This document shows, in pieces, positions 2,441-59,989 of a stretch of 64,000 nt of DNA. Source of the stretch: Oikopleura dioica (taxonomy: Eukaryota; Animalia; Chordata); contig CAJRAX010000009.1 in assembly GCA_907165135.1 (NCBI GenBank), positions 15,681-79,680 of the forward strand. Reading direction: 5' to 3'. Under the pieces are notes generated by a model. That model worked only from the letters and a program-made list of their open reading frames with translations. It was not told the origin of the DNA and made no database searches. The position numbers and the translations under genes were made by a program. Every line of letters begins with the position of its first letter. Position 1 is the stretch's first letter.

Positions 2441-2529
2441 GTTGAACTTTTTGATAAAATTTATTTCTTGGGATTAATTTCGAAGCGAACGTGGCTGTTT
2501 CGGCGAATTTCGATTGACAGAAAAACAAT

Positions 2530-2660: not shown

Positions 2661-2753
2661 TACTCAAAATAATACAGCCACGTTTTGAAATTTTGGCGTC
2701 ATTCTTTGCAAGAATTCTAGCTAAGAGAGCATTTGAGCAGCAAATCGGTATCA

Positions 2754-7701: not shown

Positions 7702-7961
7702 TGATACCGAAAGGGATGATTCTCTAAGCTAATCTGCAACTTGCAAAGGAAACAATTAAAAATTCAGGAATCGACGCTATTTTATTTGGTAAGATCGAGA
7801 ATGATTTTCGAATTTCAAATTTTCAAATTTCAATTCCGCGCAGATGGTAAAATTTCCAAATAAGGGCATTTCGCCAAGTATTTCGCGGATGTTTTGATTT
7901 TGCGCGGCGCATTTCGCGCTCTTGTTTTTCTCGTTGTTTTCTTCATTTTCGCCGCAGTGAT

Positions 7962-14340: not shown

Positions 14341-14878
14341 TGATAAGAATAGCGAAAAAGAACATAAAAGATAAAAATTGAATCCTTCCACTCACGGCGC
14401 CACCCGTTTCGGCGGTTCTTTATTTAACTCTTTCTAGTGTTCAATTTATTCTTTCTGACTGGTAATTATTTTTGATGAAACAAATTCAAAACGTCTGAAT
14501 TTGATTCCAAGAAAAAAATCAATTGGCTTTTTCTAATTACGGAGCTGTTGCATGAATTTCATCCTCTAGCTGAGTTCCGCTTTAAGCGGCTTGACAGTGT
14601 GACCCCGTGCTCCTCGGGATGGCGCTGTCTGTAAGTGCTCCTAGGTAGGCAAAATTGATTGAACACCTTTCTGGCTCGCTTTAGGCGCGAAAGCGCTGCG
14701 CCTTATTCGAAATGCCTTATTTGGAAACATCTGCCATCTGCGCGAATTTGAAATTTGAAAATTTGAAAACTGAAAAATCACTTCCTTTCTTACCAAATAC
14801 AATACGCGCCGATTTCCGAATTTTTAGTGTTTCCTTTGCAGATCGCAATTAGCTTAGAGATTTGATTAAAACGGTATC

Positions 14879-20550: not shown

Positions 20551-21630
20551 CAATAGTTCTTTCTTAAAAGATGCTCCAGACAAAAGATACCCTGGACGGG
20601 TCATACTGATAACGAGAATACATGGAAAGATAACAAAAAATAAAAAATAAAAATTGAATTCTTATAGTTTCACGGCCACTTTCGCCAATTAGGTTGATTT
20701 TCATGAAAATCACAAAATAAACTGTTCTGAAGAACCTGGAGCCAAATCTGTGGATGCTTGCATGAGTTCATCATAATCTATTTTTCCTTCATAACGTACG
20801 CGTTATTTCACATCATCAAAGGCACATTAGCCACCCGTTTCGGCGTTAACTTTCACGATTTAACCAATTCTAGTGCATCAAATTTTCAATTATTTCTCAG
20901 CAAAAACATTCATTTTAGTGCTCTTATTATTCTAGTTCTAATACAAGCTGACTTTATTATTCTGCAAACGACGACGATTCTCTGGACAACCTGGAATTGC
21001 CTCAAACGATGGACTCTTCTATGATTTCAGACGGAGCTGTTGCATGAACTTTCATCCTCTAGCTGAGTTCCGCTTTTGCGGCTTGACAGTGTGACCCCGT
21101 GCTCCGCGGGATGGCGCTGTCTGTAAGTGCTCCTAGGTAGGCGTAATTGATTGAACCCTTTTTGGCTCGCTTTAGGATGACTGACCACCCTCTGGAAAAC
21201 CGACAAAAATGCAGCTTCAACAATGGCGGCAACTTCTTCAACAACGACAACGACAACGCAATGGACTGACAACGATTTGGAAACGGCTTTGCTATAGTAC
21301 TCTTATCAAAAGTGATATGGCCACATAGTGGGAAGTTGACCTTTGATAAGAAAATGGAAATTATGGAAATCGGCTGCGGGTTGCGTGGCTGCACGCGTGA
21401 GATTGAATGACGAAAAACAAAGCGCGAAAAACAATTTGGAAAGAAAACATAAGCGCGAAATGCCTTATTTGGAAACATCTAGCACCTGCGCGAATTTGAA
21501 ATTTGAAAATTTGAAAATTTGAAAAATCACTCTCTTCTTACCCAAAATAATACAGCCACGATTTCCGAATTTTTAGTGTCATCCTTTGCAGATCGCAATT
21601 AGCTTAGAGATTTGCATTAAAACGGTATCA

Positions 21631-21937
21631 TATCAACATCATCTAAAAGTTCAAAAACGCATCAGAAAAAATATTCTGATGAAATTTTTGGCGTTTTTAG
21701 ATGATGTTGAGTTCATTTTCATCGAGAAAATATTCTGATGCGTTTTTGGCGTTTTAAGATGATGTTGAGTTCATTTTCATCGAAAAATATTCTGATGCGT
21801 TTTTGGCGTTTTTAGATGATGTTGAGTTCATTTTCATCGAAAAAATATTCTGATGCGTTTTTGGCGTTTTTAGATGATGTTGAGTTCATTTTCATCGAAA
21901 AATTATTCTGATGCGTTTTTTGGCGTTTTTAGATGAT
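21631..21937 (+). repeat. Satellite Sat-B (~59-60 bp)
   Basis: GATGATGTTGAGTTCATTTTCATCGAAAAAATATTCTGATGCGTTTTTGGCGTTTTTA units. Confidence 0.93.
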
Positions 21938-22986
21938 TGATACATTTTCATAGAGGAAAGAACACAAGAAAAAATGAAAAATTGAATATCCCAGTTTTCA
22001 GATGATGTTGAATCATTTTCATCAAAAAAGGTTGATTAGGCATGAATTTCACAGATATAATTTCCGATGATTTTGGATTTACATCAAATCTCGGATGCTT
22101 GCATGAATTCATAAATCTCTATTTTAGATGATGTTGTACGCGTCATTTTCACAATCCAAAGGCACATTAGCCACAGAATATTTTTCGGCGGTTCTTTATT
22201 TAACTCTTTCTAGTGCTCACTACTTCTTTTGTTTAATTTATTCACTGGTAACTATTTTTGATGAATCAAGCTGACTCTTCTATGTCGAAAAACGATGATG
22301 GCAATTCTTTTTGACGATAAAAATCAATTGGCTCATTTTCTAAAACTACGACGGAGCTGTTGCATGAATTTCATCCTCTAGCTGAGTTCCGCTTTAAGCG
22401 GCTTGACAGTGTGACCCCGTGCTCCTCGGGATGGCGCTGTCTGTAAGTGCTCCTAGGTAGGCAATATTGATTGAACACCTTTCTGGCTCGCTTTAGGAAA
22501 GCTGACCACTCTCCTCAAACCGACAGAATTGCAGCTTCAACAATGGCGGCGACTTCTCTGACAACAACGACGACTACGCAATGGACTGACAACGATTATT
22601 GGAACTGGCTTTGGAAAAGTATAAGTAAAAATTCATTAAATTCTATCAAAAAGGGATATGGCCACATAGTGGGAAGTTGAACTTTTTGATAAAATTTATT
22701 TCTTGTGATTAATTTCGAAGCGAACGTGGCTGTTTCGGCGAATTTCGATTGATAGAAAAACAATTGCGCGAAAAGCGCTCACCATATTTGGAAAGAAAAA
22801 CATGGCGCGAAATGCGCCGCGCCTTATTTGGAAAGAAACGCACCTGCGCGAAATGCGAATTGAAAATTTGAAAATTTGAAAAATCACTCTCTCCATACTC
22901 AAAATAATACAGCCACGTTTTGAAATTTAGGCGTCATTCTTTGCAAGATTCTAGCTTAGAGAGCATTTGCGCAGCAAAACGGTATC

Positions 22987-24056
22987 ATGGTGAACACGCA
23001 AGACTTCAACTTCAAGGTAAATAAAATGCCCGAAGAATTACTTTTGCCACTTTTCCTTCCCTCAATTCTCGTCAATTTTTTCGAAAAAATATGCTGTCTT
23101 GGCGAATTTACAATTTCTAAGAATAATTTGAGCGACAAAATATCCGCGATGCGAAAAATTTTTGACAAAAGTATTAAGGATCACAATCGAGAGTCCGACC
23201 GTAATAATTTAGAAAAAGCTTTTGACAGGCAAGTCGTGGACTGCATTCGCAATAATTGCTCACACGAATTTATGAATAATTATGGGCGGGAAATGGCAAA
23301 TTTCGAAAATATGGATGAAGTTTTTGATTTCCTGGAATCTGTTTAAGATGGAAGTGAGTCTGAGGAAGAAAAGCGAGAGCGGGCGGGAGTCGAACTAGAA
23401 AATCTTTGTCGAAGATCGGAAATGAACGAGAAGTTTTCGTCATTTTTGACAAGAATTAAAATGTCGCGGAGCTTATTTCTGATAAACAAGATGCTAGAGA
23501 CTTTATTATTAACGCTCAATTTATGAAAAGCCTCGAGCCAGCGAACAAGTCGTTTTTACGTGATCATGGAATCAGTAAAAAGAGTGCTCAGGAAATTGCC
23601 ACATTTTTGGACTCACGGGAGCGGTATTTGAGTGTGAATGTTGCCTCGATCGAGTCGGCAAATCTTGCGTCATTTGTTGATCGAACAAGCGAACTTTTGG
23701 ATTCAAAATTGACTTAGATGGAGTCGAATTATGAGCGAAAAAATTCTGAGCTTCTTGAGCAGATAAAACAATTAACAGCGACTGTAGAAAAGATAGAGCT
23801 CGAAAAGAAGGTCAAAAATGAGGAAATTACTAGGCCTGCTAACCCGCCGGCCTCAGCAAATTTTATTCCGCCGTTTCCGTTCAGATTCCAGCAGCCTCCT
23901 CAAGCGGCCCCTTTTTGCCGAAATTGCCAACAATGGGGTCATGTTAAGCCGAGATGCCCCAAAATAAAATGCTACGAGTGTCAGGGTTTTGGTCATATCG
24001 GGCGAAATTGCTTGAAACGACGGGAAAATACCACCCAAGATCAGTCAAAAAACTAG
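22987..24056 (+). CDS. gag: gag (few disruptions), two CCHC knuckles
   Basis: ORFs 22987-23346, 23523-23717, 23718-24056; CRNCQQWGHVKPRC, CYECQGFGHIGRNC. Confidence 0.88.
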
Positions 24057-30672: not shown

Positions 30673-31510
30673 TGATACGAATACGGGAAAGAACCAAGAG
30701 AAAAAAAAATAAAAATTGAATTTACTTCTCACAAATAATTTTGCGCCAATTAGGTTGATTAAGCATGAAATTCACGGTTAAATTGTTCTGATGATTTTGG
30801 AGCCAAATCTCGGATATTGCATGAGTTCATAAAATCTCTATTTTTCCTTCAATTGGTATTCTTCTTCAACTACAACGAAGCTGTTGCATGATAAATTCAT
30901 CCTCTAGCTGAGTTCCGCTTTAAGCGGCTTGACAGTGTGACCCCGTGCTCCTCGGGATGGCGCTGTCTGTAAGTGCTCCTGGTAGGCAAAATTGATTGAA
31001 CACCTTTTTGGCTCGCTTTAGGATTAACTGACCATTCTCCTTAAAACCGACAAAACTGCAGCTTCAACAATGGCGGCGACTTCTTCTTCAACGACAACGA
31101 CAACGCAATGGACTGACAACGAACATGGAACTGGCTTTGGTAAAAATATGAACGAATAGAATTTTTATTGATAAGGGATATGGCAACATAGTTGGAAATT
31201 GAACTTATTGATTAAATTCGATTCTTGCGATAAAATTCGAAGCGAACGTGGCTGTTGGAGCGAAATTGAAATCAACGAAGGAAACAAATGCGCGAAAGCG
31301 CTGCGCCTTATTTGGAAAGAAAAACATCGGCGCGAAATGCGCTGCGCCTTATTTGGAAGTAATAGCACCTGCGCGAAATGCGAAATTGAAATTTTGAAAA
31401 TTTAAAAATCACTCTCTTCAAACCCAAAATAATACAGCCACGTTTCGAATTTTAGCCTCATTCTTCGCAGGATTCTAGCTTAGAGATTAATTTGCAGCTA
31501 ATTGGCATCA
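30673..31510 (+). mobile_element. 5' LTR, subfamily A (internal deletion), followed by only traces of gag/pol
   Basis: TGATA...CATCA; left flank ATGAT; structured core at 30905-31020. Confidence 0.88.
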
Positions 31511-31549
31511 TGACATCAATCATCAACTTCAAGGCCGTAAAATGCCCGA

Positions 31550-35900: not shown

Positions 35901-38340
35901 TATTTGGATCGTACAAATCATAGAACCGGTGTCAAGAAGAAAATTAACAGGATTTGAAAAAATATTGGCCTGAACAAAAAACTGACCGCCACTTTTCGAT
36001 AGAGAATTTTTGAAAATTTTTAAAGTAGGAAACTCTTTCTGACCATAAAGAGTTTCACTTCTTAGTTTTTTTGCTCCTCGTTCTTTTCCTTGCAATCCCA
36101 TTGCCAGTGACCTTTTTTGCCACATACGTGACACACTATTTCTGGGCAAAAACGACGAGAATGGTCGTTTGTCTTGCACGAGCGGCATCTGAATTCTTGC
36201 CCTGAATTCGGACGTCGCTCGGAAGGCCTCGGATTTTTGGCCTTCTCAGCGGCCCCACCAAATTTCAGCGCAGAGATCTGAGCTGTCAATGCACTCATTT
36301 TTTCAGTCAAAGCAATTGTATTTCGGTCGTTTTCTTGCCGAATTGACTCTAGAGAACGTTCAAAGTTTTCACTCTGCTTCGCGAGAGCCGAGCTCTGAGA
36401 CTCCATGAAATCTCTCAAGCTCGATTCTAGCTCGATTTTTGAAACGCTGACTGATGCCGGTGGAGCAATGTGTCTATCTCGTGAGTCAAGAAATTCACAT
36501 ATCTCATCCGGCTTCGAGTTCCACTTCATATTATCCTTCAAAAACGACACGTTTCGTGGCGCAAGACTGTTCTTAAAATGACTAGAGAAAATATATTCCT
36601 GAGCACCGCTATCATCCGAAATTAATTTTGCGCACGACTTGATGCGACCAAGAAAAGCTTCAAATTTTTCATCGATTTCGACGCGTCGAGCAAGAGAAGA
36701 AAGCTTCTCTCTAGCACGCTGAGCAACTTGCTCTTTGGTTTCTTTCGCAAAAAGATTAGCGATAAAATCGAGCCTTTTTTCCCAACCCTCGATAGAAGAT
36801 AATTCCTCTGCATATTCAACGTAAAATGACTCGGCAAGTGAGTCGATGACAAAAGAAGCGGCCTGACGCTCAAACTGTTTCAAAAGCGCACTTTTATTAT
36901 CTCTAGAGTGCTCCTCTAAAGACCGATTGAAAAGCCAAGCCGCCCGCTGAATTTTATCATTAACTCGCTCGTGCCAATTTTTGTATTGAAAATATTTCAC
37001 GCCAACGGCGAGAGAATGATGCGAAGGGGTTGAAAAAAGCGTACCTAAGTGAAGAATTTCTTCCGGTGTTTTGGACCGCGTAGTTGTGGGTTCTGTCTCT
37101 GAGGGCGCCATGATACCTTTTCTGAGTCTCTTTTACTGCTGATTGCAATTAACTATCAATTTTTAATCAAATTTTCTGCAAGAAAATACAAGAAAATATA
37201 TTTTGCGGCGTTCAGAGGGAGATTTATTGTGAGACTGATTCAAAATAAAATTTGGCGGTGAGCGAAAATTTTAGCAGGTGCGCGAAAATGCATAACAAAG
37301 GCGAAAACAAAGACATAAACAAATGAAATTTCCTTTTTTGGAAATAAGGCGCTTCAAGTTCATCCGGTGTATTTTTTGAATCCATTTCGGATTTTGTATC
37401 TTCTTGCGGTTCGAGCCGGGTTCCCGAGCCGGAAGGGTTGAGTTTTCCAAAGTGAAGCGTTTTCTGAGTTTTTTCCGCCCAAAGAAGCCATTTTTTGTAA
37501 AAGAAGTAATTAGAATAAAGAATGTGAACATTTTAAAATAAAATAATTTATAATCAAAATTGGTCAGTTATTTTAATCATAAATTAAGCGCAAAAGGTGA
37601 TAACATAAATTAACAAGCATAAATAAAATTACAGTAAGAATTAAATCACATAAAAATTACAGGTTAATAAAATCATATTAAAATTACAGTTAAAATAAAA
37701 ATAACTTCGGCTCACCTTTCGGCAGTTACTGACGCAGTTCCCTTTGCCTTGGTAATTCGCGTCAAGCCTTATCGTTAATAAGGAACCGAAAAGGTCTCCC
37801 GTATCTGCTCAATCGCCCAAGGAGTGCTTTGTGAAGTTGATGAGTATGAAAGGAATGAAGAAGGAAAGATGACGGGAAGGTAGGACCCGTTTTCGTCGTC
37901 CGCGTCGATAGAGCATAGTCGTTGTTGATTTCAAATTAAACAGAACAGAGTGAGTTCAAATCTATAGAATTAATGAAACAGGAGCAATGATGTTGAATTT
38001 TTAACAATTATGCCAAAGTTTGAGGCAACATGCGAATTTGAGTTCATTTTCGAAAAAATAATTTGCAAGCGGTTAGGGTTTTACATTGCTACATTTAGGA
38101 AGCTTTGCGATTTTTTGAAAAATGATTCTGAAATCAATAAATGAACAGTAAGTATGAAAGCACGCTTTATGATTTTCCCTATTTTCAAAGATTTTAAAGG
38201 ATGCTAAAGAAGATTTGATGAGAGCATTGTTCAGCGGAATAATCGACGCGTTTTTGAGTGAATTGACAAATGTTGATTTCGATTAAAATGAATTTTATTC
38301 GTGAATCAGTTTTACGACGGGTTGGAAGATTGATCTTCCA
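35700..38340 (-). mobile_element. Ty3/gypsy element, subfamily E: 5' LTR (37111 to about 38340), gag, start of protease
   Basis: LTR end GGTATCA abuts gag ATG; FLLDTGS near 35930; outer boundaries approximate. Confidence 0.85.
36062..37111 (-). CDS. gag: Intact gag, 349 aa, two CCHC knuckles
   Basis: CRSCKTNDHSRRFC and CHVCGKKGHWQWDC; ends A AAA AAC TAA. Confidence 0.93.
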   Translation of the reverse strand: MAPSETEPTTTRSKTPEEILHLGTLFSTPSHHSLAVGVKYFQYKNWHERVNDKIQRAAWLFNRSLEEHSRDNKSALLKQFERQAASFVIDSLAESFYVEYAEELSSIEGWEKRLDFIANLFAKETKEQVAQRAREKLSSLARRVEIDEKFEAFLGRIKSCAKLISDDSGAQEYIFSSHFKNSLAPRNVSFLKDNMKWNSKPDEICEFLDSRDRHIAPPASVSVSKIELESSLRDFMESQSSALAKQSENFERSLESIRQENDRNTIALTEKMSALTAQISALKFGGAAEKAKNPRPSERRPNSGQEFRCRSCKTNDHSRRFCPEIVCHVCGKKGHWQWDCKEKNEEQKN

Positions 38341-38384
38341 TTCATTTTCATCGATAAAAATAGTTGAAGATGCTGTTTTTTAGC

Positions 38385-39240: not shown

Positions 39241-40110
39241 GAAAAATATAATGATGCTGAATCGCGTTTTCAGATGATGTTGAGTTCATTTTGATTTCAA
39301 AAGCTTACATCTGATGCTAATTTGGTTGATTAGGCCTCGATGTTGAGTTCAAGAAAAATATGGCAAACCAAAAAATGCGTTTTAAAGGTTTGATGATGAG
39401 ACTGAGGGTAATTTCTAGCATGAGAAAATATTAGAAAAATTGTTAACAGTTTTGCACGTACGATGTGTGTTCACATATTTCTAGGCACATTAGCCAGCCC
39501 TTTTGATATCTTACGATTCAAAAGGTTTTATTATTAATCCCTTTTAGGTTTAAAATTATTTACGCATGAATTTATCTCACGATCTTCAAAATCAACTATC
39601 CTTACAATATTCTTGTTTTTTCTTTATTTATTTGCTTTCAAAATAAGTTGACTGTACTTGGACGACAAATCTTTTTGGACGCCGTTGGAAGACTCCTTCT
39701 TACTGTTGAGCTTCCCGTAAGGGCTGAACGCTAAGTAGCCGCGGGCAGAATATCCCAAACCGGCAAAAAGCGTTTATAAGCGCTCACAGGTAATCGAACT
39801 CGCCGAGGACCGGTTACTGCTTTTCTAGGAAACTGACCATTTTCGACATTGCAGTTACACGTGCGCGTGACGCCGACCCGACAAGAACGACAACGACGAC
39901 ATCTACTGACTACGACAACGACGACGGAAACCCTGCCTGGACCGACAATGGAATTCTGACAACAACAACGACTAATGCCCTGGAATTTGTCGAGACTTGT
40001 AATAAAACAGTGGGTCACATAGTGAGAAAGCTGTTTTATTACAAGTTTTTGAAAAAAGCGCCACCTATGGCGAATTGATAAAAATAGGAATTTTTCAAAA
40101 ATATCGTAAC

Positions 40111-49751: not shown

Positions 49752-52700
49752 TGATGCCAATTAAAGATAAATTAATCTCTAAGCTAGAATCCTGCGAACC
49801 AAAGGCCTAAAATTCGAAACGTGGCTGTATTATTTTGGGTTTGAAGAGAGTGATTTTTAAATTTTCAGAATTCCAATTTCGCATTTCGCGCAGGTGCTAT
49901 TACTTCCAAATAAGGCATTTCGCGCATTTCGCGCCGATGTTTTTCTTTCAATAATGACGCGGCGCTTTCGCGCATTTGTTTCCTTCGTTGATTTCAAATT
50001 TCGCTCCAATCGCCACGCTCGTAATTATCATTTTTTTATCGCAAGAATTAAATTAAATCATATCAAGATCAACTTCCCACTATGTGGCCATATCACCCTT
50101 GATCACTTTTAAATTCTATTTTTTCATATTTGTCCAAGTCCAGTTTCCAAAATCGTTGTCAGTCCATTGCGTTGTCGTTGTCGTTGTAGTTGCTGGAGAA
50201 GTCGCCGCCATCGTTGAAGCTGCAGTTTTGTCGGTTTTGAGGAGAATGGTCAGTAATCCTAAAGCGAGCCAAAAAAGTGTTCAATCAATTTTGCCTACCA
50301 GGAGCACTTACAGACAGCGCCATCCCGAGGATCACGGGGTCACACTGTCAAGCCGCTTAAAGCGGAACTCAGCTAGAGGATGAATTTCATGCAACAGCTC
50401 CGTTGAAGTTGTAGAAGATAGCCAATTGAAGTTTTTCCAATTGGCGAAAAGCATTTCCAAGCAGTTGTCGTTGTTGATATCAAGAAGAGACGAATTGTTT
50501 CATCAAAAATAATTACCAGTCAGAATATTGAAGAATAAAGTGTGAACACTAGAAAGTTAAATAAAACCGCCGAAACGGGTGGCTAAGGTGCCTTTGAAGA
50601 ATGTGAAATAACGCGTACGTTATGAATGAGAAATATAGATTTTTATGAACTCATGCTATCCAAAGATTTGGCTCCATAAATCTTCAGTTCGTTTAACTAG
50701 TGAATTTCATGCAAAATCAACCTAATTGGCGAAATTCGGGCCGTGAGAAGAAGATTCAATTTTTATTTTTTATGTTCTTTTTCGCTATTCTTATCAGTAT
50801 GACCCGTTGTGGGTATCTTTTTAATTTTTTTCTTTTGGAGCTTCTTTTTCGAAAAAAAACTATTGAATCTTAAGATTTTGGTCCAAAAATAAGTTCATTG
50901 TTTTTTCTTGGATGATTTGGATAAAGTTGTTCAAAGGAAATTTTCACAAATTCGATCATTTCAGTTTTGTTTTGGATAACAGTTTTTGGAAGTTTGTATT
51001 CAGAAATCAGGACCTTTAATTCGGGTTTGGTCAAATCGTAAAGAGTCTTCTCCTTTTTCAAGTTTAAAACTGAAAAAAATAAAAACTCTCCAGATTCGCT
51101 TTTTCGCCAATTAGGGTGATTCTTACGTATATACTCTCTGATTTTAATTCTTAATTCACCTACGGATTCCGTCGTATTATAAAAGACCTCAAACTTATAC
51201 AAAATAAACCTAAGGGCTTCTTTCGTTAGCTCTCCCAATTTCAAAATACACCCTTTCTCAATGTCCTCATCCTCCCTAATCCGTTCTTCAATATTTTTGA
51301 AAAATTCAATGTCAACATTTTCAAATTTAAAAGCAATAGAAATATTAAAATTTTGCTCACATATCATTTCCGAACAATCACTGGCCTGAGAAAAAGAATT
51401 TTCCGTTTCTAAAATATCTTAATTTGGAATTTTTGCAGAGGGATTTGAATCTTTGGATGATTCTCTTTCTCGTTTTCGATCGTTTTGTAAACATTCACCC
51501 TCGTTTAAATTTTCATATTCAAGTTTGCCTTCCCGATTAGCTGTAATATCCAATTTGTCATATGAAACTAAATGTTCCGAATTATTATCAGTTTGATTAT
51601 GGACCGTTTCTGTCTCAATTTCAGAATCAAGTGTGACTTCCCAATGAGAATGCTCTTCTATTTCCCATTCAGAGTCACAAACCGAGTTTGAATCTCGAGG
51701 CGAAAAATCATGTGGTTTTGGAATCTCATCCATCATTGACGAATTTACAGTTTCATTTACGGTTATATTTTGGTTTTCTATAATTGAAACAACAGAGTCT
51801 TCTTCGTCGGACGAGTCAATTGATTCTAGTGTTTCAATAATAAAATCTGTAAATATATTCTCAAAAATTCCATCGACAGAAGATGAGACAATTTTTTCGT
51901 ACGCATTTTCCAGCAAATTTGCCTCAGAAGATAAACTCACTGGGAAATACGAACAACTTGAAAAATTTTCATGGAATCCAGAAGAATAATTTTCGGGGTT
52001 TTCTGAATCATTTTGAGCGCCAGGGGAAAAATTCGGAATTCCCGAGCTTACTGTTATTTCATTTCTTTCATTATATTTTTTCAAATGATCAGCGTGTCTC
52101 CGATATTCTTTTTCCCCAGATCTGACCGTATACCACGTTCCCTCTGGTGAGCTGCATATAACTTCATATGGGCCTAAAAAAGCTGTTTTTTTAGCGTTAA
52201 AATTTTTAATGAGAACTTGATCGCCCACCTTATATTTTACAAATTTAGGATTAGAAAATTTTTCAAGCCTGATTTGCTTTTCTTCGTCCAATAATTTTTT
52301 GATCGATTCAAAATTAATTTGTTCTCGTTCGTTATAAACTCTGTAATTTGGGTCAAAAATATCATGAGGATTCTTAAATCCAAATTGAAGCGAGAATGGA
52401 GATGTTTTAGTGACCGAATGTTGTGAAGTATTTAAATCATGGACAATTTCTTGCAAAAATAAATCCCAGTTTTTATAATCACATATAGCTCGCAGTCTAC
52501 TTTTAAGTGTTCTATTAAAATTTACAACTTGACCATTAGTTGATGGATGTCTTGGTGGTGTAAAATGGGGCTCTATCGAATTTTCTTTCATAAATTTTTC
52601 TATTTCGGAATGCTCTCGAGCATTATCTAAGATAACTTTTTTTGGGAAATACGGATTTTTAAAAATAACGCTTTTAAATTTACCGAGAAGATATTTTGAA

Positions 52701-55046
52701 TCTCGAGATTTTAGCGGTTCACAATAACCGAATTTTGAGAAAAAATCAATCATCACTAAAACATATTTATTTCCAAAATCCGTTGGAGGAAGCGTGATAA
52801 GGTCAAATCCGAAAACTTCAAAGGGTCCGTCTGGAGTCTTGAATGATAAAATGGGAGCTTTATTGGGATGAAAATTAGGCTTATCTTTTTGGCAGAACGG
52901 GAAAGTTTTTATAAATTCTTTAATTCCATTACGCATACGCGGCCAGATATATTTCTTTGAAATTTTAGCAAAAACTTGGTCAATTCCTGCGTGACAATAA
53001 TCGTGATAATTCTTTATGATTTCATTTTCGATATTTTTCGGCACGAGAACGCGACGATTATTAAACTCATCAATGTAGGCTATTTCTCCACTTTCCAAAA
53101 AGGTCAATTTATCTCTCAAAAACGAATAAAAATTGATGTCTCCCTTTGGGTTATTAGGCCATCTATCGATTTGCACGTATCTTCGAATTTCACTAAGCGT
53201 TGGGTCTAATTTTTGGATTTCACAATATTGATCTTGGGAAATTTGAATTGAATTTAAATTGACTTTTTGAGGATTATTTCTACTCAAACAATCGCTTATT
53301 TTCATTTTTGACGAAGGTTTTTGAATAGTTCGAAAATTGAAACCTTGAATTTCTGTTATCCATCTAGCAATTTTTTGATTATTTGTTCTAAGCGATCTGA
53401 TATATTTTATATTCGAATTATCTGTTATCCAGTCGAATTCCGTATAAGAGAGATAAACAGCCCATTTTGTCATACAAGTTTTTGCAGAGTATAATTCCTT
53501 TTCGATAATTGTGTACTTTGACTGTGTTTCATTAAAATTACCGCTATTATAACCAACAGGGACCAAACAATCTGTAGAATGATGATGATTCTCGTCCCGA
53601 CATTTTTGATCACAAATATACAGTACTCCGCCGTAGCCAGAAGATGATGCATCTGTTTCTAAGACAAAAACGCCCTGATCGGCTGGGGGAATTCTTAATT
53701 TCATTGCATTATTGCAAATTATTTCTTTGAGTTTTAAAAATGCTTGAGTGGCCTCATTCGTCCAGCAGAACGAATTTCTTTATGTTTTTGTTATCGGTTA
53801 TGCTATTGCCGCAAAATTTTTAATAAATCTTCTATGATAATTTAAAAGTCCAAAAAGACTTTGTGCACTTTCTTTAGATGTCGGGATTTTAAGATTTTCA
53901 ATCGCCTTGATTTTGTCTTTTGTTGGGGAAATTTCGCCGTTAGAAATGAAATAGCCGCAAAAATTTACAGACCGCATAAAAAACGACGCTTTGCGCGAAT
54001 GAATGCGCAAATTGTTAGCATCAAGAATAGTAAAGAATTTTTTTAAATTTAATAAATGCTCCTCTTCCGTTTTGCTATGAATTAGTAAATCATCCATATA
54101 GGGTAAAATCGCTGTTTTTTCAACCCCTTTCAAGGCTTGGTCAATTATACGCATGAAAAACGCGGGCGCGTTGCGGCAGCCCATCGGCATTCGCAAAAAC
54201 CTAAATTGGCCATGTTCGGTCGTAAACGCCGTCTTATTTTTGACTCTTCCGTTAATTCTACCTGATGGAACCCCTTGATGAGGTCCACCGAACTAAAAAT
54301 TTTGCTTTTCTCTAAATACGAAAGTGAGTCTTCTAAGTTTGGCAGGGGATGATGAATTTGTATTGTTGCATCATTTAGCTTTCGAAAATCGATCACGAGG
54401 CGCCACCGCCCGTCCTTTTTTCTGACCAATATTGCGGGACTATTTCAGGGGCTTGAACATTTTTCTATTATTTTATTCCCAGAAAATTTATCTAAAAGAT
54501 ATTTCCATTCTTGTCGCAAACTAAATGGTTGTCTATACGGCTGTGAAGAAATGGGGCTTTCTGTATTTGTATCAATCGAAAATTTTTCAATAGAACACGC
54601 GGGAAGGGGATCATCATCATCAAGAAATAAATGTGTGATTATGTCTAAAAGGGCGTAAAATTCTTTTTTTACTTCTGGAGAGTTAATTTGACCGACTGAG
54701 ATATTTTTCATATTTTTTTTATTATTTGTATTTTTGATTTGCGCTATCTCGACTATTTCATGTAATTTGGCAAATACAGTTCCAGCTGGAATACGAATCG
54801 TTGTGTCTGTCGGATTAATAACTAGTAACCGAAAAATTGGTGAATCTTTCTCTACAATTTGTAAACTTGGAATAAGTTGCAGTTTTGAGTTACCAAGATT
54901 CGAATTTTCAAAAGAGAGACTCATAGTTTTATTGAAATTTTTAACCGATAAATCAATTAATCTTTCTGATTATCCCTTGAAGAAAAATGTTTCTGTTGAA
55001 AATGCTTCATATTCTTCAATCGACTCATTTTTTAAACAATCAGTAG

Positions 55047-56286
55047 TAGGGTCGGACATAAGTTCCCGATTTCGAGGAAAATAGGCTTGTACATTACTGT
55101 ATGGTAACTTAGGACCAAAATACTTGATTCCCGAAGTTTGGTCGAGATTCATCAAGAATCACGTGATTTACGACCAAAAATGTTGTTTTTTTGGAGAAGT
55201 TTTGAAAAATGAGTAATATCTCTTGATGAGTCATGCAGTCGTCATCATAAGTCATCTATAAATGTTCCTTAGCGTCTGTGCTTTCGATCCATTCTAGTAA
55301 CATAAGGATCACGTGACATTTTTGGCATCAAAAAGGCCTTCAAAGTTCGAAAACCTAGATTTTTACGAAAAAAATCTTCGGTTTTTCGAAAATTTTACGT
55401 TACGAAAATCAGGGCCGCTTTGAACGAAGCATATATTCTGATAGCTCAGAGTCTGCGCTATCCAAAAAAAGTTAAATGATTGAACCGGACCCGGGTGGAA
55501 AAATTTCTAGAGCTGTTTGAATGATATCTGGGGTTGCGCAAGTGGGAGAATCAATTTTTTTTGCACTGGACATGGAGGGATAAAATTTTGTGGACATATT
55601 TCTGAGGTCCTAATCAAGAATAAAATCGAAAAAAATTTTCGAAAAGATAAGGGTATGGGGGTCAAAAAATCGATTTTTTTTATTTTTGTAAAATTAAGCC
55701 TGTACAAACCTAGACGACCATTTTAACAGCTCAAAAATAATTTGAGCTAATAATCAAGGAACGGGGCTGAGACGGCCCGAAGGGCCGTCAAGCCCCTTAA
55801 ATTTAATAATCAAGGAACGGGGCTGAGACGGCCCGAACGGGGCTGAGAAGGATAGGGATTCGAACCCGCGACCTTCAGATTCGAAAATATTGACAAGATA
55901 TTTGTTTGAGACATATTTGTTTTTATATTTTTCATCAAAAAATTAATTTTTTCATGATTTTTATAGATTTTGGCTTCTTTTGATGGCTCTAGAATATTTT
56001 TGACTTGGGGAAATCAACTCACATGCCTCTCCAATCGTTGCGCAGAGGCTATTTATTATCTTCAGCAGCAAATAAGTTGATCACGTGACAGTTTTCTTAA
56101 CAAATTTTATGAAATTCCGAAAGTATTCGAAAAATCGAAATTTTGAATTTCCAAATTGCTCTAGAATTTTTTCCACCTATACCCCGGAACCCCAAATTTT
56201 TTTTGGGGAATACTGGGACCCAAAGGAACATATTCTGAAAATATTAGCCTGCGGCCCCCACTTTGGGAACTTTATGTCCGACCCTA
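55047..56286. mobile_element. Non-autonomous hAT-type DNA transposon
   Basis: TIR TAGGGTCGGACATAA; 8-bp TSD ATCAGTAG at 55039-55046 and 56287-56294. Confidence 0.92.
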
Positions 56287-56636
56287 ATCAGTAGCATTTT
56301 CATCAGAATTAATTAAATTAAGATTTGCAAATCGTTCAACCGGGCCTGCTTGAATCAATTTTTTACGATGAAGGTTAATCAAAATTTCATTATCCAGAAT
56401 CGCTGGCACTCCTAAAATGGGGCTTAGATTATCCGAGACCACATAAAACCAGGACTTTCCCCAGGAAACATTATCAATTATTAACTCGGTTTCGATTTTT
56501 CAATAAATTTCTATTTTTCCGCCGGTATAATTAACTGCCTCCATTTTTGTTTTTTCAATTTTTTTGTTTTTTGGAATATATTTTTTACAAATACAATTTA
56601 ATTGTGAACCTGTGTCAAGTAAAAAACGAACATGTG

Positions 56637-57780
56637 TGATATCGAAAGCAAATGTCCTAAGAATGTCTCTTAACTGCTAAAATGCAAATCACATGCGATA
56701 AAATTGAAACAAAATGTAAATTTTCAAAACGATGTGGCGGTGGATGTATTTGTGGAAAGAATGATTTTCGGATGCAGAAATTTTTGAAATTTCATATGCA
56801 GATGTTTCTAAATAACAAAAACATTTCCATAAAAGGAAATTTTCGCGGCTTCGTTGTTTTTTATTTGCTGCGCGCATATCGCGCGATTGTTTTTCTTTCC
56901 AAAAGGCTCCAAATAATCGCACCAAGCACCACTAAATCGCTTCTTTTTTATCACTGCAAATTCAAGATTCTCACTATGTGACCTCAAGAATTTACAGTAA
57001 TTTCCAGTTTTAGTCTAAATCCAATTTCGTCGTCTATTCCATAGCAAGTTCCGTTGTCCAAGTGGTAGTAGTTGTAGTTGTCGTCATCACCGTCGTCCCA
57101 AATGGCCGTTGTGTAGTTGTTGTCGTTTTGAAGTGGTCAGCTAGAAAAGAACAGCAACCGTAACAAGCTCAAAAGCTTCGATTACCTAGAGGCGCTTAAT
57201 TCCGCGGTTGACCGTTTTGGCATTTTCTGGCCCCGGCACTTTGCGGAAAGCCGGACATAAACCACCAATTTTATGCCCGGAAGCCTAGCTAGTAAGAACA
57301 GCAATTCCAGTGAACCCATAGAAGAGAACCAAGTTTTCGGCGTCGTAGAAGCAAAATCCGTCGATTATTAATTTACCTTTTTTTGTACTGTCAATAATTA
57401 TGAACATAAAATAGTGATTTTTAACTAGAAATTTGTCATCCTTTTTCATGCAATAAGAAGTTATGAAAAAAAACCGTCGAAACGGGCGGCTAATGTGCCT
57501 TTTTTAAGATGATGTGAAAGCACGCGTACGTACCGAAATTACAAAATAAACCAATGTTTATTTTCCCCCAATTAGTTTTGTTTTGTCTATAATACCTAAT
57601 TAACTAATCTTAATTAAAATTAAAGGATTTTACCCACTTAGTTAGGAATTATAGACGTGAAATGAATGATCTTTTCGATTTGGCTCTAATCGATTTTTGT
57701 GATTTTAAAGTTGGCGAAGACCGTGACTCTGAATTATTTAATTTTTCATTTTTTGTGTTCTCTTTTTCCTATCATTATCA
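56637..57780 (-). mobile_element. Solo LTR, subfamily F, nested in protease
   Basis: TGATA...TATCA; TSD ATGTG; removing it restores IFDSHVRFLLDTGS. Confidence 0.94.
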
Positions 57781-57878
57781 ATGTGAATCAAAAATTTTAG
57801 CATTAACAAAAAATTGCTCGCCAATTTTATTTACAGAAATTTTCGGGATTGAAATTTGACCAGAATTTGTCCCGTAAA

Positions 57879-58926
57879 TTAGTTTTTGCTCAGCAGATTC
57901 CTGTTTCTCCCGACGCTTCAAACAAAATCTAGAAATGTGACCAAAACCATCACATTCGAAACATTTGATTTTTGGACAACGCGGTTTAGTATGGCCCCAT
58001 TGATTACAATTACGACAGAAGGGGCTGCTTTGGGGCGTCCGAGAATATCCAAATGGATACGGGGAATCGCTGCGGGCGTTTGGGGCACGGGCTTATTTAT
58101 GTTCTCCCTCTTTTCAACTTCGAGCTTGGCTACAGTCGCAGTCAACTGTTTAATCATGTCTGAGAGCTCTGAATTTTTGCGTTCATAATTAGACTCCATT
58201 TGAGCGAGTCTTGAGTCCAATATTTCACTTGTCTTATCGACAAAAGACGCTAAATTCGTCTCAATCGAGGAAACACTGACACTCAATAAACGCTCTCTGG
58301 AATCCAAAAATCGGCAACATCCTGAGCACTCTTCCTGTTATACCCGTGATCTCGTAGAAATGACTTGTTGGCTGGTTCCAAACTTTTCATAAAATGTGCA
58401 TCTGTAATAAACGAAACAGCGTCTGGTTTATCAGAAATCATTTCTGCAACCGTCCGAATTCTCGTCAAATATGAACCGAATTTTTCATTCATTTCCGACC
58501 TACGAGCCATATTATCGAGTTCATTTTGGGCCCGCTCCCGCTTCTCGTCCTCAGTTTCCTTGCCGAAAACCGTTTCCAAAAATTCAAAAGCCTTTTCAAC
58601 AGTCTCCAAATTTGCCATTTCCCGCCCGTGATTGCAATTAAAATCATGAGAGCAATTGTTCCGAATACAATCAACTGCCTGTCTTTCAAACGCTTTTTCT
58701 AATTCAGTCCGATTAGACTGTCGGTTATGATCTTGAATTGATTTTAAAAACAATTTTTCATGGCCGAAATTTTGTCGCTTAAATTATTTTTAGAAATTTG
58801 AAATTCATAAGAAAGCATATTGGGCCGAAAATGTTGCCTTGAATTTAGGGAAGGAAATGGGGCAAAGAGAAAATCTTCGGGCCATTTTGTTACCCTGAAG
58901 TTGGAGTCGCCGCTAGTGGCCGCCAT
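57879..58926 (-). pseudogene. gag: gag (frameshifted)
   Basis: ORFs 58744-58926, 58283-58753, 57918-58307 homologous to other A-type gag. Confidence 0.88.
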
Positions 58927-59989
58927 GATGCCAATTACTGTGATATATGACTCTCTAATCTAACTGCGTCTTGCAAAGAATGAGGCCTCAAAATACGAAA
59001 CGTGGCTTTTATTATTTTGGTTATGAAGAGAGTGAACTTCACATTCAATTTTTTCAGAATTGCATTTTTCGCAGGTGCTATTTTTTCCAAATTAGGCATT
59101 TCGCGCATTTCGCGCAAGTGTTTTTTCTTTCAATAATGACGCGGCACATTTCGCGCCTTTTGTTTTCTTCGTTTCTTTCAAATTTTCGTTACATAATCGC
59201 CACGCTCGTAATTATTATTTTTTTTTATAATTATTTTTTAAATAAAATCATATCAAGGGATCAACTTCCCACTATGTGGCCATATCACCCTTGATAGACT
59301 TTTAAATTCATTTTTTTTCATTTTGTCCAAGTCCGGTTTCCAAAATCGTTGTCAGTCCATTGCGTTGTCGTTGTCGTCGTAGTAGTTGCTGGAGAAGTTG
59401 CCGCCATCGTTGACGCTGCAGTTCTGTCGGTTTGAAGAGAATGGTCAGTAATCCTAAAGCGAGCCAGAAAAGTGGTCAATCAATTTTGCCTACCTAGGAG
59501 CACTTACAGACAGCGCCATCCCGAGGATCACGGGGTCACACTGTCAAGCCGCATAAGCGAAACTCAGCTAGGAAATGAATTTCATGCAACAGCTCCGTTG
59601 AAGTGTAGATGATAGCCAATTGAAGTATTTCCTAGGCAAAAGCATTTCCAAGCAGTCCAAATCGTTGTTGATATCAAGAAGAGACGAATTGTTCCATCAA
59701 AAATAATTACCAGTCAGAAAAATAGGAGAATAAGTGAACACTAGAAAGATTAAATAAAACCGCCGAAACGGGTGGCTAAGGTGCCTTTGAAGAATGTGAA
59801 ATAACGCGTACGTTATGAATGAGAAATATAGATTTTTATGAACTCATGCTTTCCAAAGATTTGGCTCCATAAATCTTCAGTTCGTTTAACTAGTGAATTT
59901 CATGCAAAATCAACCTAATTGGCGAAATTCGGGCCGTGAGCAGAAGATCCAATTTTTATTTTTTATGTTCTTTTCCGCTATTCTTATCA

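What the first reader, a model, noticed from the sequence alone, without database searches (positions are those of the whole stretch)
37706..37790. Covarying multi-stem RNA core shared by all six divergent LTR subfamilies: candidate new ribozyme or cis-acting RNA class
Seen: on the element sense strand the LTRs read UUCC-[P2 hairpin]-GGC-[P3 stem...P3']-UAA(C/G)YGC-short loop-GGU(A/G), with C slightly deviant, although surrounding LTR sequence aligns poorly. P2 varies in sequence but keeps pairing: CCGC uuuu GCGG (A), CCAC gaaa GUGG (B, 8545-8665), CCC guaa GGG (D, 39706-39818), CCUUAUU aac GAUAAGG (E, here), CCGGGCAUAAA..UUUAUGUCCGG (F, 57157-57290), CGGAC..GUCCG (C, 4655-4790). P3 covaries: GACAGUG/CGCUGUC, GUUCGC/GCGAAC, GAACGC/GCGUUU, UUCCGC/GCGGAA, UGACGC/GCGUCA, UGUCGC/GCGACA. 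In B-F, P3 holds an AA(G/C/U)UA / (G/C)AAC loop-E-like internal loop. In E, UUCGGUU/AGCCGAA closes a four-way junction with a GCC-GAAA-GGU hairpin. A copies: 2144, 13440, 14565, 21060, 22380, 30905, 50260, 59455, 63928. Inference: conserved junction nucleotides on variable helices are typical of catalytic or ligand/protein-binding RNAs. By eye it does not fit hammerhead, HDV, twister or pistol. It could process the genome, make a primer, or direct export or packaging.
Basis: partly seen in the sequence, partly recalled or inferred. Interest (0 to 1): 0.92.

Follow-up and report, generated by a model that had tools for sequence, protein, structure and literature searches.

The report
Conserved folded RNA inside retrotransposon LTRs
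A stretch of about 90-115 bases in the middle of the long terminal repeats of a Ty3/gypsy-like retrotransposon lineage keeps the same three-armed fold in six otherwise diverged repeat families, so it is very probably a working RNA signal of the element, but nothing shows that it is a ribozyme.

Summary
The window is satellite DNA invaded by degenerate Ty3/gypsy-type elements of an unidentified eukaryote. It holds 14 complete copies of the motif, one copy cut by the window end and one eroded remnant.

All complete copies fold into the same three-way junction. 92.8% of pair cells are paired, against 32-52% in slid controls, and 16 of 22 pairs show changes on both sides. G.U outnumbers A.C 13 to 3, which points to the sense strand.

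A model built from three families finds the other three. No Rfam family matches, even at E<=5. A second covarying hairpin lies about 200 nt downstream.

Promoter-like and poly(A)-like motifs sit 102-128 nt before the LTR end. The motif is therefore probably in U3, the 3' UTR of the element's RNA; this placement is inferred.

Best reading: a non-catalytic, protein- or tRNA-binding cis-acting RNA domain. The ribozyme idea is unsupported, and E's four-way junction is not shared.

The parts
37710..37797 (-). M1 copy E (the finding): P0/P1 stem closing a three-way junction with hairpin P2 and long arm P3
   Evidence: Covariance-model hits of 23.2 bits (model from B, D, F only) and 59.2 bits. Fold.
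2139..2226 (+). M1 copy A1
13470..13556 (-). M1 copy A2. In P0 it reads CCAG/CTGG where other A copies have CTAG/CTAG, a change on both sides.
14563..14650 (+). M1 copy A3, in an LTR copy that lacks the stretch holding HP2
21056..21142 (+). M1 copy A4
22375..22462 (+). M1 copy A5
30901..30988 (+). M1 copy A6
50292..50379 (-). M1 copy A7
59488..59574 (-). M1 copy A8
63960..64000 (-). M1 copy A9, 3' half only; the rest lies beyond the window end
8571..8669 (-). M1 copy B1
12640..12738 (-).
4657..4765 (-). M1 copy C. It is deviant: no TTCC, and P2 follows P1 after one base.
39700..39795 (+). M1 copy D
57180..57295 (-). M1 copy F, with an 11-bp P2
44710..44798 (+). Eroded M1 remnant in a mosaic of D-type LTR pieces and 59-bp satellite pieces; P2 and the 5' strand of P3 are gone
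   Evidence: 19.8 bits with model R1, not found by model R2
2425..2440 (+). HP2 apex, copy A1. HP2 is the second conserved hairpin; its stem extends about 15 nt to each side.
21319..21334 (+). HP2 apex, copy A4
22660..22675 (+). HP2 apex, copy A5
31182..31197 (+). HP2 apex, copy A6. The apical mini-stem is CAAC/GTTG instead of CCAC/GTGG.
13280..13295 (-). HP2 apex, copy A2 (CAAC/GTTG variant)
50074..50089 (-). HP2 apex, copy A7
59266..59281 (-). HP2 apex, copy A8
63709..63724 (-). HP2 apex, copy A9
8358..8373 (-). HP2 apex, copy B1
12429..12444 (-). HP2 apex, copy B2
4481..4496 (-). HP2 apex, copy C
40013..40028 (+). HP2 apex, copy D, flanked by a perfect 15-bp stem
56968..56983 (-). HP2 apex, copy F
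21937..22987 (+). Complete A-type LTR (1051 bp; starts TGATA, ends TATCA). It is the 5' LTR of a gag-pol copy. M1 lies at 439-526 of the LTR and the HP2 apex at 724-739.
1724..2753 (+). Complete A-type LTR that follows the end of a pol copy
49752..50796 (-). A-type LTR, 3' LTR of the element that spans 49752-59989
58926..59989 (-). A-type LTR, 5' LTR of the same element. It is 88% identical to its partner.
7702..9146 (-). B-type LTR (1445 bp)
4062..5353 (-). C-type solo LTR (1292 bp) with the 5-bp target duplication AGAAG, inserted in the ~170-bp satellite
56637..57780 (-). F-type solo LTR (1144 bp) with the 5-bp target duplication CACAT, nested inside the A-type element
37223..37238 (-). Initiator-like TCAGTC followed by AATAAA in LTR E, 128 nt before the LTR end at 37111. 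The same pair lies 102-128 nt before the end in 10 of 11 LTR copies (for example 22884-22908, 7781-7804 and 56745-56764).
36062..37111 (-). gag of element E, an open 349-aa frame with a weak zinc-knuckle match. Its ATG shares its A with the last base of the LTR.
50879..57978 (-). pol (protease, reverse transcriptase, RNase H, integrase, C-terminal extension) of the element between LTRs A8 and A7. It is broken and carries the nested F LTR.

Best explanation
M1 is a conserved, non-catalytic, cis-acting structured RNA domain of a Ty3/gypsy-type (Metaviridae-like) retroelement lineage.

Shown:
- On the element's sense strand, about 90-115 nt fold into a long closing stem (P0 plus P1). The stem opens into a three-way junction with a hairpin of free length (P2) and a long arm (P3a, internal loop, distal helices).
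- Helix sequences differ between families while pairing is kept. The junction letters and the P3 internal loop are kept.
- M1 is the best-conserved part of the LTR. It is one of at least two covarying modules; the other is the hairpin HP2, about 200 nt downstream.

Inferred:
- All families carry an initiator-like motif and an AATAAA-like motif 102-128 nt before the LTR end, preceded by repeated GCGCGAAA-type sites. [quoted passage not shown]
- M1 would then be transcribed only from the 3' LTR and sit in the roughly 1-kb 3' UTR of the full-length RNA.

Most likely mechanism (inferred): the junction and internal loop are a docking platform for a conserved partner. That partner would be an element protein such as Gag/nucleocapsid or reverse transcriptase, a host RNA-binding protein, or the primer tRNA as in Ty3. 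The docking would decide the fate of the full-length RNA: stability or export, selection for packaging, or assembly of the reverse-transcription complex. P2 and the tip of P3 would be spacers.
For: Element type:
- Pfam finds RVP, RVT_1, RNase H and rve in the order protease, reverse transcriptase, RNase H, integrase.
- The closest solved relatives are yeast Ty3 reverse transcriptase and Gag-Pol.
- The LTRs start TGATA and end TATCA and have 5-bp target duplications.

Structure:
- Each family alone folds into the same topology.
- 92.8% of pair cells are paired against 32-52% in slid controls. 16 of 22 pairs change on both sides, and 0 of 500 shuffles reach the score.
- RNAalifold recovers P0a, P1, P2 and P3a, with 11 of 16 pairs compensated.
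- A model from B, D and F alone finds A, C and E.

Strand: G.U 13 cells against A.C 3. The wobble pairs in HP2 are also on the sense strand, and no antisense hits appear.

Selection: within family A, M1 is 93% identical on average. The 60 nt upstream are 70% identical, the 200 nt downstream 76% and the next 200 nt 62%. The associated pol proteins are only 36-80% identical.

Second module: HP2 has 13 copies against 0 expected. On an ungapped alignment anchored by sequence only, 76.8% of cells are paired against 41-51%, with covariation 0.571 against <=0.21.

Placement: the initiator-like plus AATAAA-like pair lies 102-128 nt before the LTR end in 10 of 11 copies. M1 lies 525-869 nt before the end.

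Precedent: Ty3 keeps part of its primer-binding site in U3 (PMC5371799).

Not a known family: Rfam gives nothing.
Against: - No expression data exist. U3, R and U5 are assigned from motifs alone, and PMC3601003 stresses that such borders need RNA mapping.
- Only six independent families, all from one window, carry the covariation. The main alignment is fitted to the structure.
- Folding energies are only modestly better than shuffles (z -0.8 to -2.3), and the antisense strand folds about as well.
- No partner is identified.
- U3 is normally the least conserved part of an LTR (PMC3601003). A conserved RNA there is unusual, and this could mean the placement is wrong.
Confidence: 0.5

Rival explanations
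1. M1 is a 5' leader element. Transcription would start upstream of M1, so that M1 and HP2 lie in a long R or U5. They would act as packaging, dimerisation or reverse-transcription signals at the 5' end of the genomic RNA, as the structured R/U5 regions of retroviruses do.
For: - Conserved stem-loops are typical of long R regions (PMC3601003).
- In families A and B a TCATCC/TCATTT string, loosely initiator-like, sits directly 5' of P0.
- Shared blocks that look like transcription-factor sites also lie upstream of M1.
Against: - R would have to be 500-900 nt, far longer than the R lengths cited in PMC3601003 (11-150 nt).
- The conserved pair of initiator-like and AATAAA-like motifs, preceded by GCGCGAAA repeats, lies 400-750 nt downstream of M1 at a fixed distance from the LTR end.
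- The string 5' of P0 is absent in D, E and F.
Confidence: 0.15
2. M1, or the strand just 3' of it, is the U3 half of a two-part primer-binding site as in Ty3. The primer tRNA would pair with a short site next to the 5' LTR and with U3 of the 3' LTR, bridging the RNA ends.
For: - Ty3, the closest characterised relative, does exactly this (PMC5371799).
- The TGG-led strings after the 5' LTRs are short and differ between copies. Only TGG(C/T)G is shared, and the longest tRNA-end-like string is TGGCGCCC in E.
- In D the 8 letters AATCGAAC that follow GGT are complementary to the common tRNA T-loop motif; F has 7 of them.
Against: - The T-loop complement is absent at that place in A, B, C and E.
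- It overlaps P0, so it would compete with the fold.
- No host tRNA is available: none lies in the window.
- A duplex search between M1 or HP2 and the leader gave nothing above shuffles.
Confidence: 0.1
3. M1 is a self-cleaving ribozyme of a new class, embedded in the LTR as hammerheads are in retrozymes.
For: - The architecture is a three-way junction with conserved junction letters on variable helices.
- LTR-borne hammerheads exist in retrozymes and Penelope-like elements (PMC4918200, PMC4209133).
- No known family explains M1.
Against: - No model of a ribozyme class scores even at E<=5.
- The junction lacks the hammerhead core.
- Few unpaired letters are invariant.
- Cleavage in U3 would sever R and the poly(A) tail from the genomic RNA. 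An integrase-bearing element has no known use for that.
- No truncated copy in the window ends inside M1.
Confidence: 0.06
4. M1 is a separate small RNA gene nested in the LTR. It would be transcribed on its own, for instance by RNA polymerase III. P0 would be the terminal stem formed by the two RNA ends, and a T-run would be the terminator.
For: - P0 pairs the two flanks of the domain.
- A run of four or more T lies within about 40 nt downstream in nearly all copies.
- Some retroviruses carry polymerase III small-RNA genes in U3 (own knowledge).
Against: - No conserved box A or box B.
- ARAGORN and Rfam (Y, vault, SRP, tRNA-like and other families) find nothing.
- T-runs are common in DNA with 35% G+C.
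- Conservation continues well beyond the T-run, to CTGACCA and HP2.
Confidence: 0.07
5. The conserved G|GTR is a 5' splice site, and M1 regulates its use by hiding it in P0. CTGACCA would be a branch site and a downstream CAG the acceptor.
For: - G|GT(A/G) is invariant. The flanks read AG|GTAATC, AG|GTAGGC, AG|GTGAGC and GG|GTATGT.
- CTGAC fits the general branch-site pattern. A, B and D have an AG 15-35 nt further on.
Against: - Positions +4 to +6 vary.
- F has no nearby AG, and in E and C the spacing is very different.
- The covariation of P0 with the upstream TTAC or CCTC explains the conservation of GGTA by pairing alone.
- An intron in a 3' UTR has no evident use.
Confidence: 0.06
6. The fold acts in DNA. 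It would be a hairpin or cruciform in the LTR or in single-stranded plus-strand DNA during reverse transcription, or the palindromes would be protein-binding sites in the promoter.
For: - M1 lies among likely transcription-factor sites.
- Plus-strand strong-stop DNA has the sense polarity.
Against: - The excess of G.T over A.C (13 to 3) argues against a two-strand cruciform.
- Helix sequences and lengths are free (P2 has 3-11 bp), unlike protein-binding palindromes.
Confidence: 0.05

Closest known systems
U3 segment of the two-part primer-binding site of yeast Ty3 (PMC5371799)
   Same: It is a functional RNA element in U3 (the 3' UTR) of a Ty3/gypsy element, and Ty3 is the closest solved relative of this element's reverse transcriptase and integrase. 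The site next to the 5' LTR is short in both.
   Different: The Ty3 element is a pair of linear stretches complementary to tRNA arms, not a covarying three-way junction. Complementarity to a tRNA could not be shown here.
Structured export or response elements in the 3' UTR or U3-R of retroviruses: constitutive transport elements and Rex/Rec-type response elements (established knowledge; no sequences compared)
   Same: They are large, conserved, protein-binding RNA folds near the 3' end of the full-length RNA that control its fate. Some lie within U3-R of the 3' LTR.
   Different: No sequence or fold likeness was tested, because comparators from animal viruses were not fetched. This element shows no env or accessory gene and no proven splicing, so the need for such an element is unclear.
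Hammerhead ribozymes in the LTRs of plant retrozymes and in Penelope-like elements (PMC4918200, PMC4209133)
   Same: They are small three-way-junction RNAs embedded in terminal repeats of retroelements.
   Different: The hammerhead core letters are absent and no Rfam hit appears even at E<=5. The host elements of those ribozymes lack integrase or are non-autonomous and use circular RNA, whereas this lineage is a standard integrase-bearing LTR element.
Stem-loops of retroviral R/U5 leaders (packaging, dimerisation and primer-activation signals; PMC3601003 links residual conservation of long R regions to stem-loops)
   Same: They are covarying helices with conserved unpaired letters in LTR-derived RNA.
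   Different: Those lie downstream of the transcription start. M1 lies 400-750 nt upstream of the likely start.

Membership tests
Hammerhead ribozyme | Three-way junction whose strands carry the conserved core (CUGANGA, GAAA and the cleavage-site triplet) | tested here: not met
   The junction strands are 1-2 nt (U or UU), 2 nt (CU) and 5-7 nt (xUAAGy type). Rfam hammerhead models give no hit at gathering score or at E<=5.
Other small self-cleaving ribozymes (twister, twister-sister, pistol, hatchet, HDV-like, hairpin) | Match to the class's covariance model, meaning its fold and invariant core | tested here: not met
   No hit in the whole window at gathering score, nor in LTR B or LTR A at E<=5.
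Any self-cleaving ribozyme | Site-specific self-scission | not testable with these tools
   No RNA data are available. Indirectly, no LTR copy in the window is truncated inside M1.
Ty3-type two-part primer-binding site (U3 half) | Location in U3 of the 3' LTR | tested here: inconclusive
   U3 placement is inferred from initiator-like and AATAAA-like motifs 102-128 nt before the LTR end. No transcript mapping exists.
Ty3-type two-part primer-binding site (U3 half) | Complementarity to the T and D arms of the primer tRNA | tested here: inconclusive
   An 8-nt complement of the common T-loop motif follows GGT in D, with 7 nt in F, but it is absent at that place in A, B, C and E. No tRNA gene lies in the window.
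Retroviral 5' leader signal (packaging or dimerisation) | Lies between the transcription start and gag | tested here: inconclusive
   M1 lies 525-869 nt before the LTR end, upstream of the likely start site. The start site itself is inferred only.
Spliceosomal 5' splice site | G|GURAGU-like donor with a branch site and acceptor at a consistent distance | tested here: inconclusive
   G|GUR is invariant, but +4 to +6 vary and the letters are paired in P0. No consistent acceptor exists, since F has no nearby AG.
RNA polymerase III small RNA gene (tRNA-like, Y, vault, SRP-derived) | Internal box A and box B or a known fold; a T-run terminator | tested here: not met
   The boxes are not conserved across families. 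ARAGORN finds 0 genes and Rfam gives 0 hits. Only the T-run is present.
Ty3/gypsy (Metaviridae-type) LTR retroelement, as carrier of M1 | pol order protease, reverse transcriptase, RNase H, integrase | tested here: met
   Pfam RVP, RVT_1, RT_RNaseH, Integrase_H2C2 and rve occur in that order. The best solved relatives are Ty3.
Ty3/gypsy (Metaviridae-type) LTR retroelement, as carrier of M1 | Direct LTRs with TG...CA ends and short target duplications | tested here: met
   The ends are TGATA and TATCA. The 5-bp duplications are CACAT (F) and AGAAG (C).
Ty3/gypsy (Metaviridae-type) LTR retroelement, as carrier of M1 | tRNA primer-binding site after the 5' LTR and a polypurine tract before the 3' LTR | tested here: inconclusive
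   TGG-led strings follow the LTR but differ between copies and overlap the gag start. No clear purine run abuts the 3' LTRs.

The most novel reading that the evidence does not exclude
M1 is the catalytic core of a new class of self-cleaving RNA carried in the LTRs of an integrase-bearing retroelement lineage. Short of that, M1 with HP2 would be the first structured RNA-fate module (export, stability or packaging) described in U3 of Metaviridae-type elements.
Probability: 0.06. Interest if true: 0.9.

Novelty: new variant of a known kind. Interest (0 to 1): 0.5.

Why it matters
U3 is generally the least conserved and least understood part of an LTR (PMC3601003). Cis-acting RNA signals of LTR retrotransposons are known for only a few model elements.

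Here a roughly 100-nt three-way junction and a second hairpin are held by compensatory changes across LTR families whose pol proteins are only 36-80% identical. M1 is much better conserved than its surroundings.

That gives a well-defined candidate for a new RNA family, with model, alignment and strand. It also gives a concrete question: what binds it, and at which step of the element's RNA life? Its placement could be settled by transcript mapping in the source organism.

If the U3 placement holds, some Ty3/gypsy-like lineages rely on a structured 3' UTR. This would extend the one precedent, Ty3's U3 primer-binding segment.

Tried and rejected
1. Rfam at gathering score on the whole window, and at E<=5 on a B-type and an A-type LTR. 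Only chance-level hits appeared outside M1.
2. tRNA and tmRNA scan: none found.
3. Plain MAFFT of the copies misaligned the 5' halves. I replaced it with a model-based alignment.
4. Strand choice by folding energy: both strands fold about equally well. Wobble counts were used instead.
5. Self-priming or 5'-3' cyclisation:
   - The longest exact complement between the post-LTR string and the LTR is 9 nt, in HP2 of one copy. It is not kept in register in the others.
   - Duplex energies of M1 or HP2 with the leader are no better than shuffles, with z from -2.0 to +0.5.
6. A conserved reading frame between M1 and HP2:
   - The frame through the HP2 apex is open in B, D and C, but it has stops in A and F.
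   - The shared CTGACCA is read in different frames in B and D.
   - The T-poor (AAC/GAC)n tract cannot hold stops in any sense frame.
   - I rejected it as a conserved gene.
7. Polymerase III boxes were judged by eye on the aligned copies and are not conserved.
8. Host identification:
   - The best pol relatives (38-56% identity) are unnamed proteins on metagenome contigs of at most 8 kb.
   - The closest named proteins reach only 23-27% identity and come from fungi, a sponge and a carp.
   - The host stays unknown. Nothing suggests human DNA.
9. A whole-LTR alignment for a conservation profile was unreliable in the 3' half because of length differences. Only the position table is used.


Full report
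SETTING

The window has 30-40% G+C and carries no tRNA gene and no Rfam family. About a third of it is satellite DNA:
- arrays of a 58-59-bp unit at 21660-21951, 28195-30672, 32017-35574 (inverted), 38341-39292, 43755-49751 and 59990-60206;
- arrays of a 162-172-bp unit at 2754-4061, 5357-7701, 14006-14340 and 60216-63398.

Between the arrays lie copies of LTR retroelements.
- The longer reading frames carry retroviral-type protease, reverse transcriptase, RNase H and integrase domains in the Ty3/gypsy order, plus a gag with a weak zinc-knuckle match.
- The closest solved relatives of the reverse transcriptase and integrase regions are those of yeast Ty3 (4OL8, 7Q5B).
- The closest proteins in the large collection (38-56% identity) are unnamed and sit on metagenome contigs of at most 8 kb. 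The closest named proteins reach only 23-27% identity.
- The host is therefore an unidentified eukaryote. Nothing suggests human DNA.

STATE OF THE ELEMENTS

These are approximate counts from tblastn pieces; no places are given. No copy in the window has an intact gag-pol.
- The pol copy at the window start is cut by the window edge. The part present is open.
- In the copy between LTRs A3 and A4, pol shows about 10 frame changes and about 20 stops. Its gag is partial with 1 frame change.
- In the copy after LTR A5, the protease and reverse-transcriptase part is an open 513-aa frame. The rest has 2 frame changes and many stops, and satellite DNA interrupts it. Its gag has 1 frame change and 3 stops.
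- The B-type copy lacks gag, protease and the start of reverse transcriptase. What remains has 2 frame changes and 3 stops.
- In the copy between LTRs A8 and A7, pol has about 2 frame changes and about 10 stops and carries one nested solo LTR. Its gag is partial with 1 frame change.
- Element E has an open 349-aa gag, but satellite DNA cuts the element off in the protease.
- The gag after LTR D has 4 stops.

THE OBSERVATION

- On the sense strand each copy reads TTCC, a hairpin, GGCT, a stem, a variable insert, the return strand, xTAAGy, a few bases and GGT(A/G).
- The degenerate core pattern has 12 matches in the window against 0.02 expected.

EXTENDED STRUCTURE

Folding each family on its own gives one shared topology.
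- The four to six bases just 5' of TTCC pair with the bases just 3' of xTAAGy. This is P1: TCGC/GCGA in B, GAGC/GCTC in D, AGGC/GCCT in F, GAGT/GCTC in A, TTTCGG/CCGAAA in E and GGGG/CCCC in C. P2 and P3 therefore hang on a three-way junction.
- Outside P1 a further stem (P0) pairs the conserved GGTAA with upstream TTAC in B, D and F. In A it pairs GGTAGG with CCTC. Next to it sits an inner CATG/CATG, CTAG/CTAG or CCAG/CTGG step.
- The conserved GGTA is therefore part of a helix.
- In B, D and F the P3 arm continues through an internal loop, three or four pairs, three more covarying pairs and a shared 8-nt loop.

STATISTICS

Plain MAFFT misaligned the 5' halves, so I worked through covariance models.
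- I aligned only B1, D and F, wrote the structure, and built model R1.
- With filters off, R1 found every A copy, E and C full-length at the homologous LTR position on the sense strand (19-24 bits, E 0.001-0.02). It found nothing comparable on the antisense strand.
- Model R2, built from 11 copies, separates 14 copies (59-76 bits) from the next hit (13.6 bits).
- On the 14-copy alignment, 92.8% of pair cells are standard pairs against 32-52% with slid partners. 16 of 22 pairs carry changes on both sides against 4-7. The covariation score is 0.573 against at most 0.11, and no shuffle of 500 reaches any measure.
- RNAalifold on the same alignment recovers P0a, P1, P2 and P3a, with 11 of 16 pairs compensated.

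Caveats:
- The alignment is fitted to the model.
- There are only six independent families, all from one window.
- Single-sequence energies are only modestly better than shuffles (z -0.8 to -2.3).

STRAND

The antisense strand folds about as well, so energy does not decide. Wobble pairs do:
- 13 G.U cells against 3 A.C cells in the modelled pairs;
- more sense-strand wobbles in the inner part of P2 (E, F), in P3 of A, and in HP2 of B, C and F.

SELECTION

Within family A the motif is on average 93% identical between copies. The 60 nt upstream are 70% identical, the next 200 nt downstream 76% and the 200 nt after that 62%. The pol proteins attached to the different LTR families are only 36-80% identical.

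THE LTR AROUND THE MOTIF

Complete LTRs are 1030-1445 bp. They start TGATA and end TATCA, and two solo LTRs (C and F) have 5-bp target duplications.

The families are not unalignable outside the motif. The shared blocks are:
- a small hairpin after GGCACATTAGCC;
- ACGTACGCGT-type and TGCATGAA-type strings;
- the motif itself;
- CTGACCA;
- a T-poor (AAC/GAC)n tract ending in TGGACTGACAACGA-like letters;
- a long hairpin, HP2;
- repeated GCGCGAAA-type strings;
- the 3' end.

HP2 has a 16-nt apex present 13 times against 0 expected.
- Its stems share no sequence between families but pair throughout.
- On an ungapped alignment anchored by sequence only, 76.8% of cells are paired against 41-51% slid, with covariation 0.571 against at most 0.21.
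- The apical mini-stem covaries as CCAC/GTGG, TCAC/GTGA and CAAC/GTTG.
- LTR E and the 5' LTR copy A3 lack HP2 but keep the motif.

WHERE IN THE TRANSCRIPT

In 10 of 11 LTR copies an initiator-like string (TCAGTC, TCATTC or TCACTC) lies 102-128 nt before the LTR end and is followed within 25 nt by an AATAAA-like string. C has a TATTTAA box in the same region.
- These are the conserved landmarks of LTRs of animal Metaviridae and retroviruses (PMC3601003).
- They imply a short R and a U5 of about 70-90 nt.
- The gag ATG shares its A with the last base of the LTR.
- The motif lies 416-589 nt from the LTR start and 525-869 nt before its end. It is therefore probably in U3, which is transcribed only from the 3' LTR as part of a roughly 1-kb 3' UTR.
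- This is inference. The same paper stresses that these borders need RNA mapping.

WHAT IT IS AND HOW IT LIKELY WORKS

Conserved junction and internal-loop letters sit on helices of free sequence and length, with strong purifying selection, in the sense RNA of a retroelement. This describes a cis-acting, partner-binding RNA domain.
- The closest characterised relative, Ty3, has a functional U3 element, the distal half of its two-part primer-binding site (PMC5371799).
- Retroviruses place structured export or response elements in the same part of the RNA (established knowledge; no comparator was fetched).
- My best reading is a docking platform that controls the fate of the full-length RNA: stability or export, packaging, or assembly of the priming complex.
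- I give 0.5 to the general statement (a cis-acting, non-catalytic sense RNA domain) and much less to any single role.

RIVALS

- A 5' leader element, if transcription starts upstream (0.15).
- A Ty3-like tRNA docking site (0.10). An 8-nt complement of the tRNA T-loop motif follows GGT in D and 7 nt in F, but it is not shared.
- A nested small RNA gene (0.07).
- A hidden splice donor (0.06).
- A new ribozyme (0.06).
- A DNA-level structure (0.05).
- For the ribozyme there is no positive evidence. No class model scores even at E<=5, the junction lacks the hammerhead core, and cleavage in U3 would remove R from the genomic RNA.

STEPS LEFT OUT, AND A POSSIBLE SLIP

- I did not fetch related loci from the public collections by pattern or by protein. 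The element is virus-like, and its host is unknown and may be an animal: the promoter-like motifs are of the kind described for animal elements. The test on a larger alignment therefore remains open.
The two covariance models are profiles of the roughly 100-nt non-coding motif only.
- The scripts held about a dozen 8-16-nt anchor strings copied unchanged from different copies in the window in order to locate them. This may exceed "a few short motifs".

VERDICT

This is a real, well-supported structured element and a good candidate for a new RNA family of retroelement cis-signals. I score interest 0.5.

Noticed in passing
window 44685-45030 (+), compared with 39655-40010: A D-type LTR stretch, including the 5' part of the motif, is collinear with LTR D. 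At intervals, blocks of it are replaced by pieces of the 58-59-bp satellite unit. This is a mosaic at the edge of the largest satellite array. The unit and the LTR share TGTTGAG(T/C)TTC-like letters at the P1 5' strand, so the satellite may have arisen from, or be converting, LTR sequence.
   Followed up: partly
window 2425-2440, 8358-8373, 40013-40028 and ten more: A second covarying hairpin (HP2) lies about 200 nt downstream of the motif. It has a 16-nt conserved apex and family-specific stems of 10-15 bp. It is missing from LTR E and from LTR copy A3.
   Followed up: yes
window 1930-1989, 39484-39543, 57440-57499(-), 59726-59785(-) and others: A third small hairpin lies upstream of the motif, just after GGCACATTAGCC. 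It is CCGT-TTCG-RCGG in A and F and an unrelated 8-bp hairpin at the same place in D.
   Followed up: partly
window 22700-22880, 7840-7930(-), 56850-56900(-), 37280-37340(-): Repeated GCGCGAAA(A/T)GCGC-type strings lie between HP2 and the initiator-like motif. They resemble cell-cycle (E2F- or SCB-type) sites and each can also form a short GC hairpin. This looks like the enhancer part of the LTR.
   Followed up: no
window 22985-23030(+), 58890-58928(-), 14878-14915(+), 37095-37113(-): The gag start codon overlaps the last base of the LTR (..ATCA|TGG..), so the primer-binding site would lie inside the first gag codons. The strings after TGG differ between copies. About 75 nt after the motif, A-type LTRs carry ATGGCGGCGACT, which resembles the post-LTR start ATGGCGGCCACT of one copy.
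   Followed up: partly
window 8290-8535(-) and the equivalent stretch in other LTRs: A T-poor (AAC/GAC)n tract lies between the motif and HP2. Sense frames are open across it, up to an 82-codon ATG frame in B. The frames are not kept across families, so this is probably composition and not a gene.
   Followed up: yes
window 40620-41000 (+): A patch of interspersed (GAGCT)n pentamer runs lies downstream of LTR D, between HP2 and the next gag.
   Followed up: no
window 28195-30672(+), 30849-31514(+), 32017-35574 (inverted): LTR copy A6 sits between two arrays of the 58-59-bp satellite in opposite orientation. The elements appear to have inserted into, or been overrun by, satellite arrays, as in centromere-like regions.
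   Followed up: no
window 8017-9146 and 12088-13216: Two 1130-bp direct repeats, 99% identical, flank a pol remnant. The upstream repeat is an incomplete LTR copy that abuts pol directly, so this element is a deletion derivative and not a normal LTR pair.
   Followed up: partly
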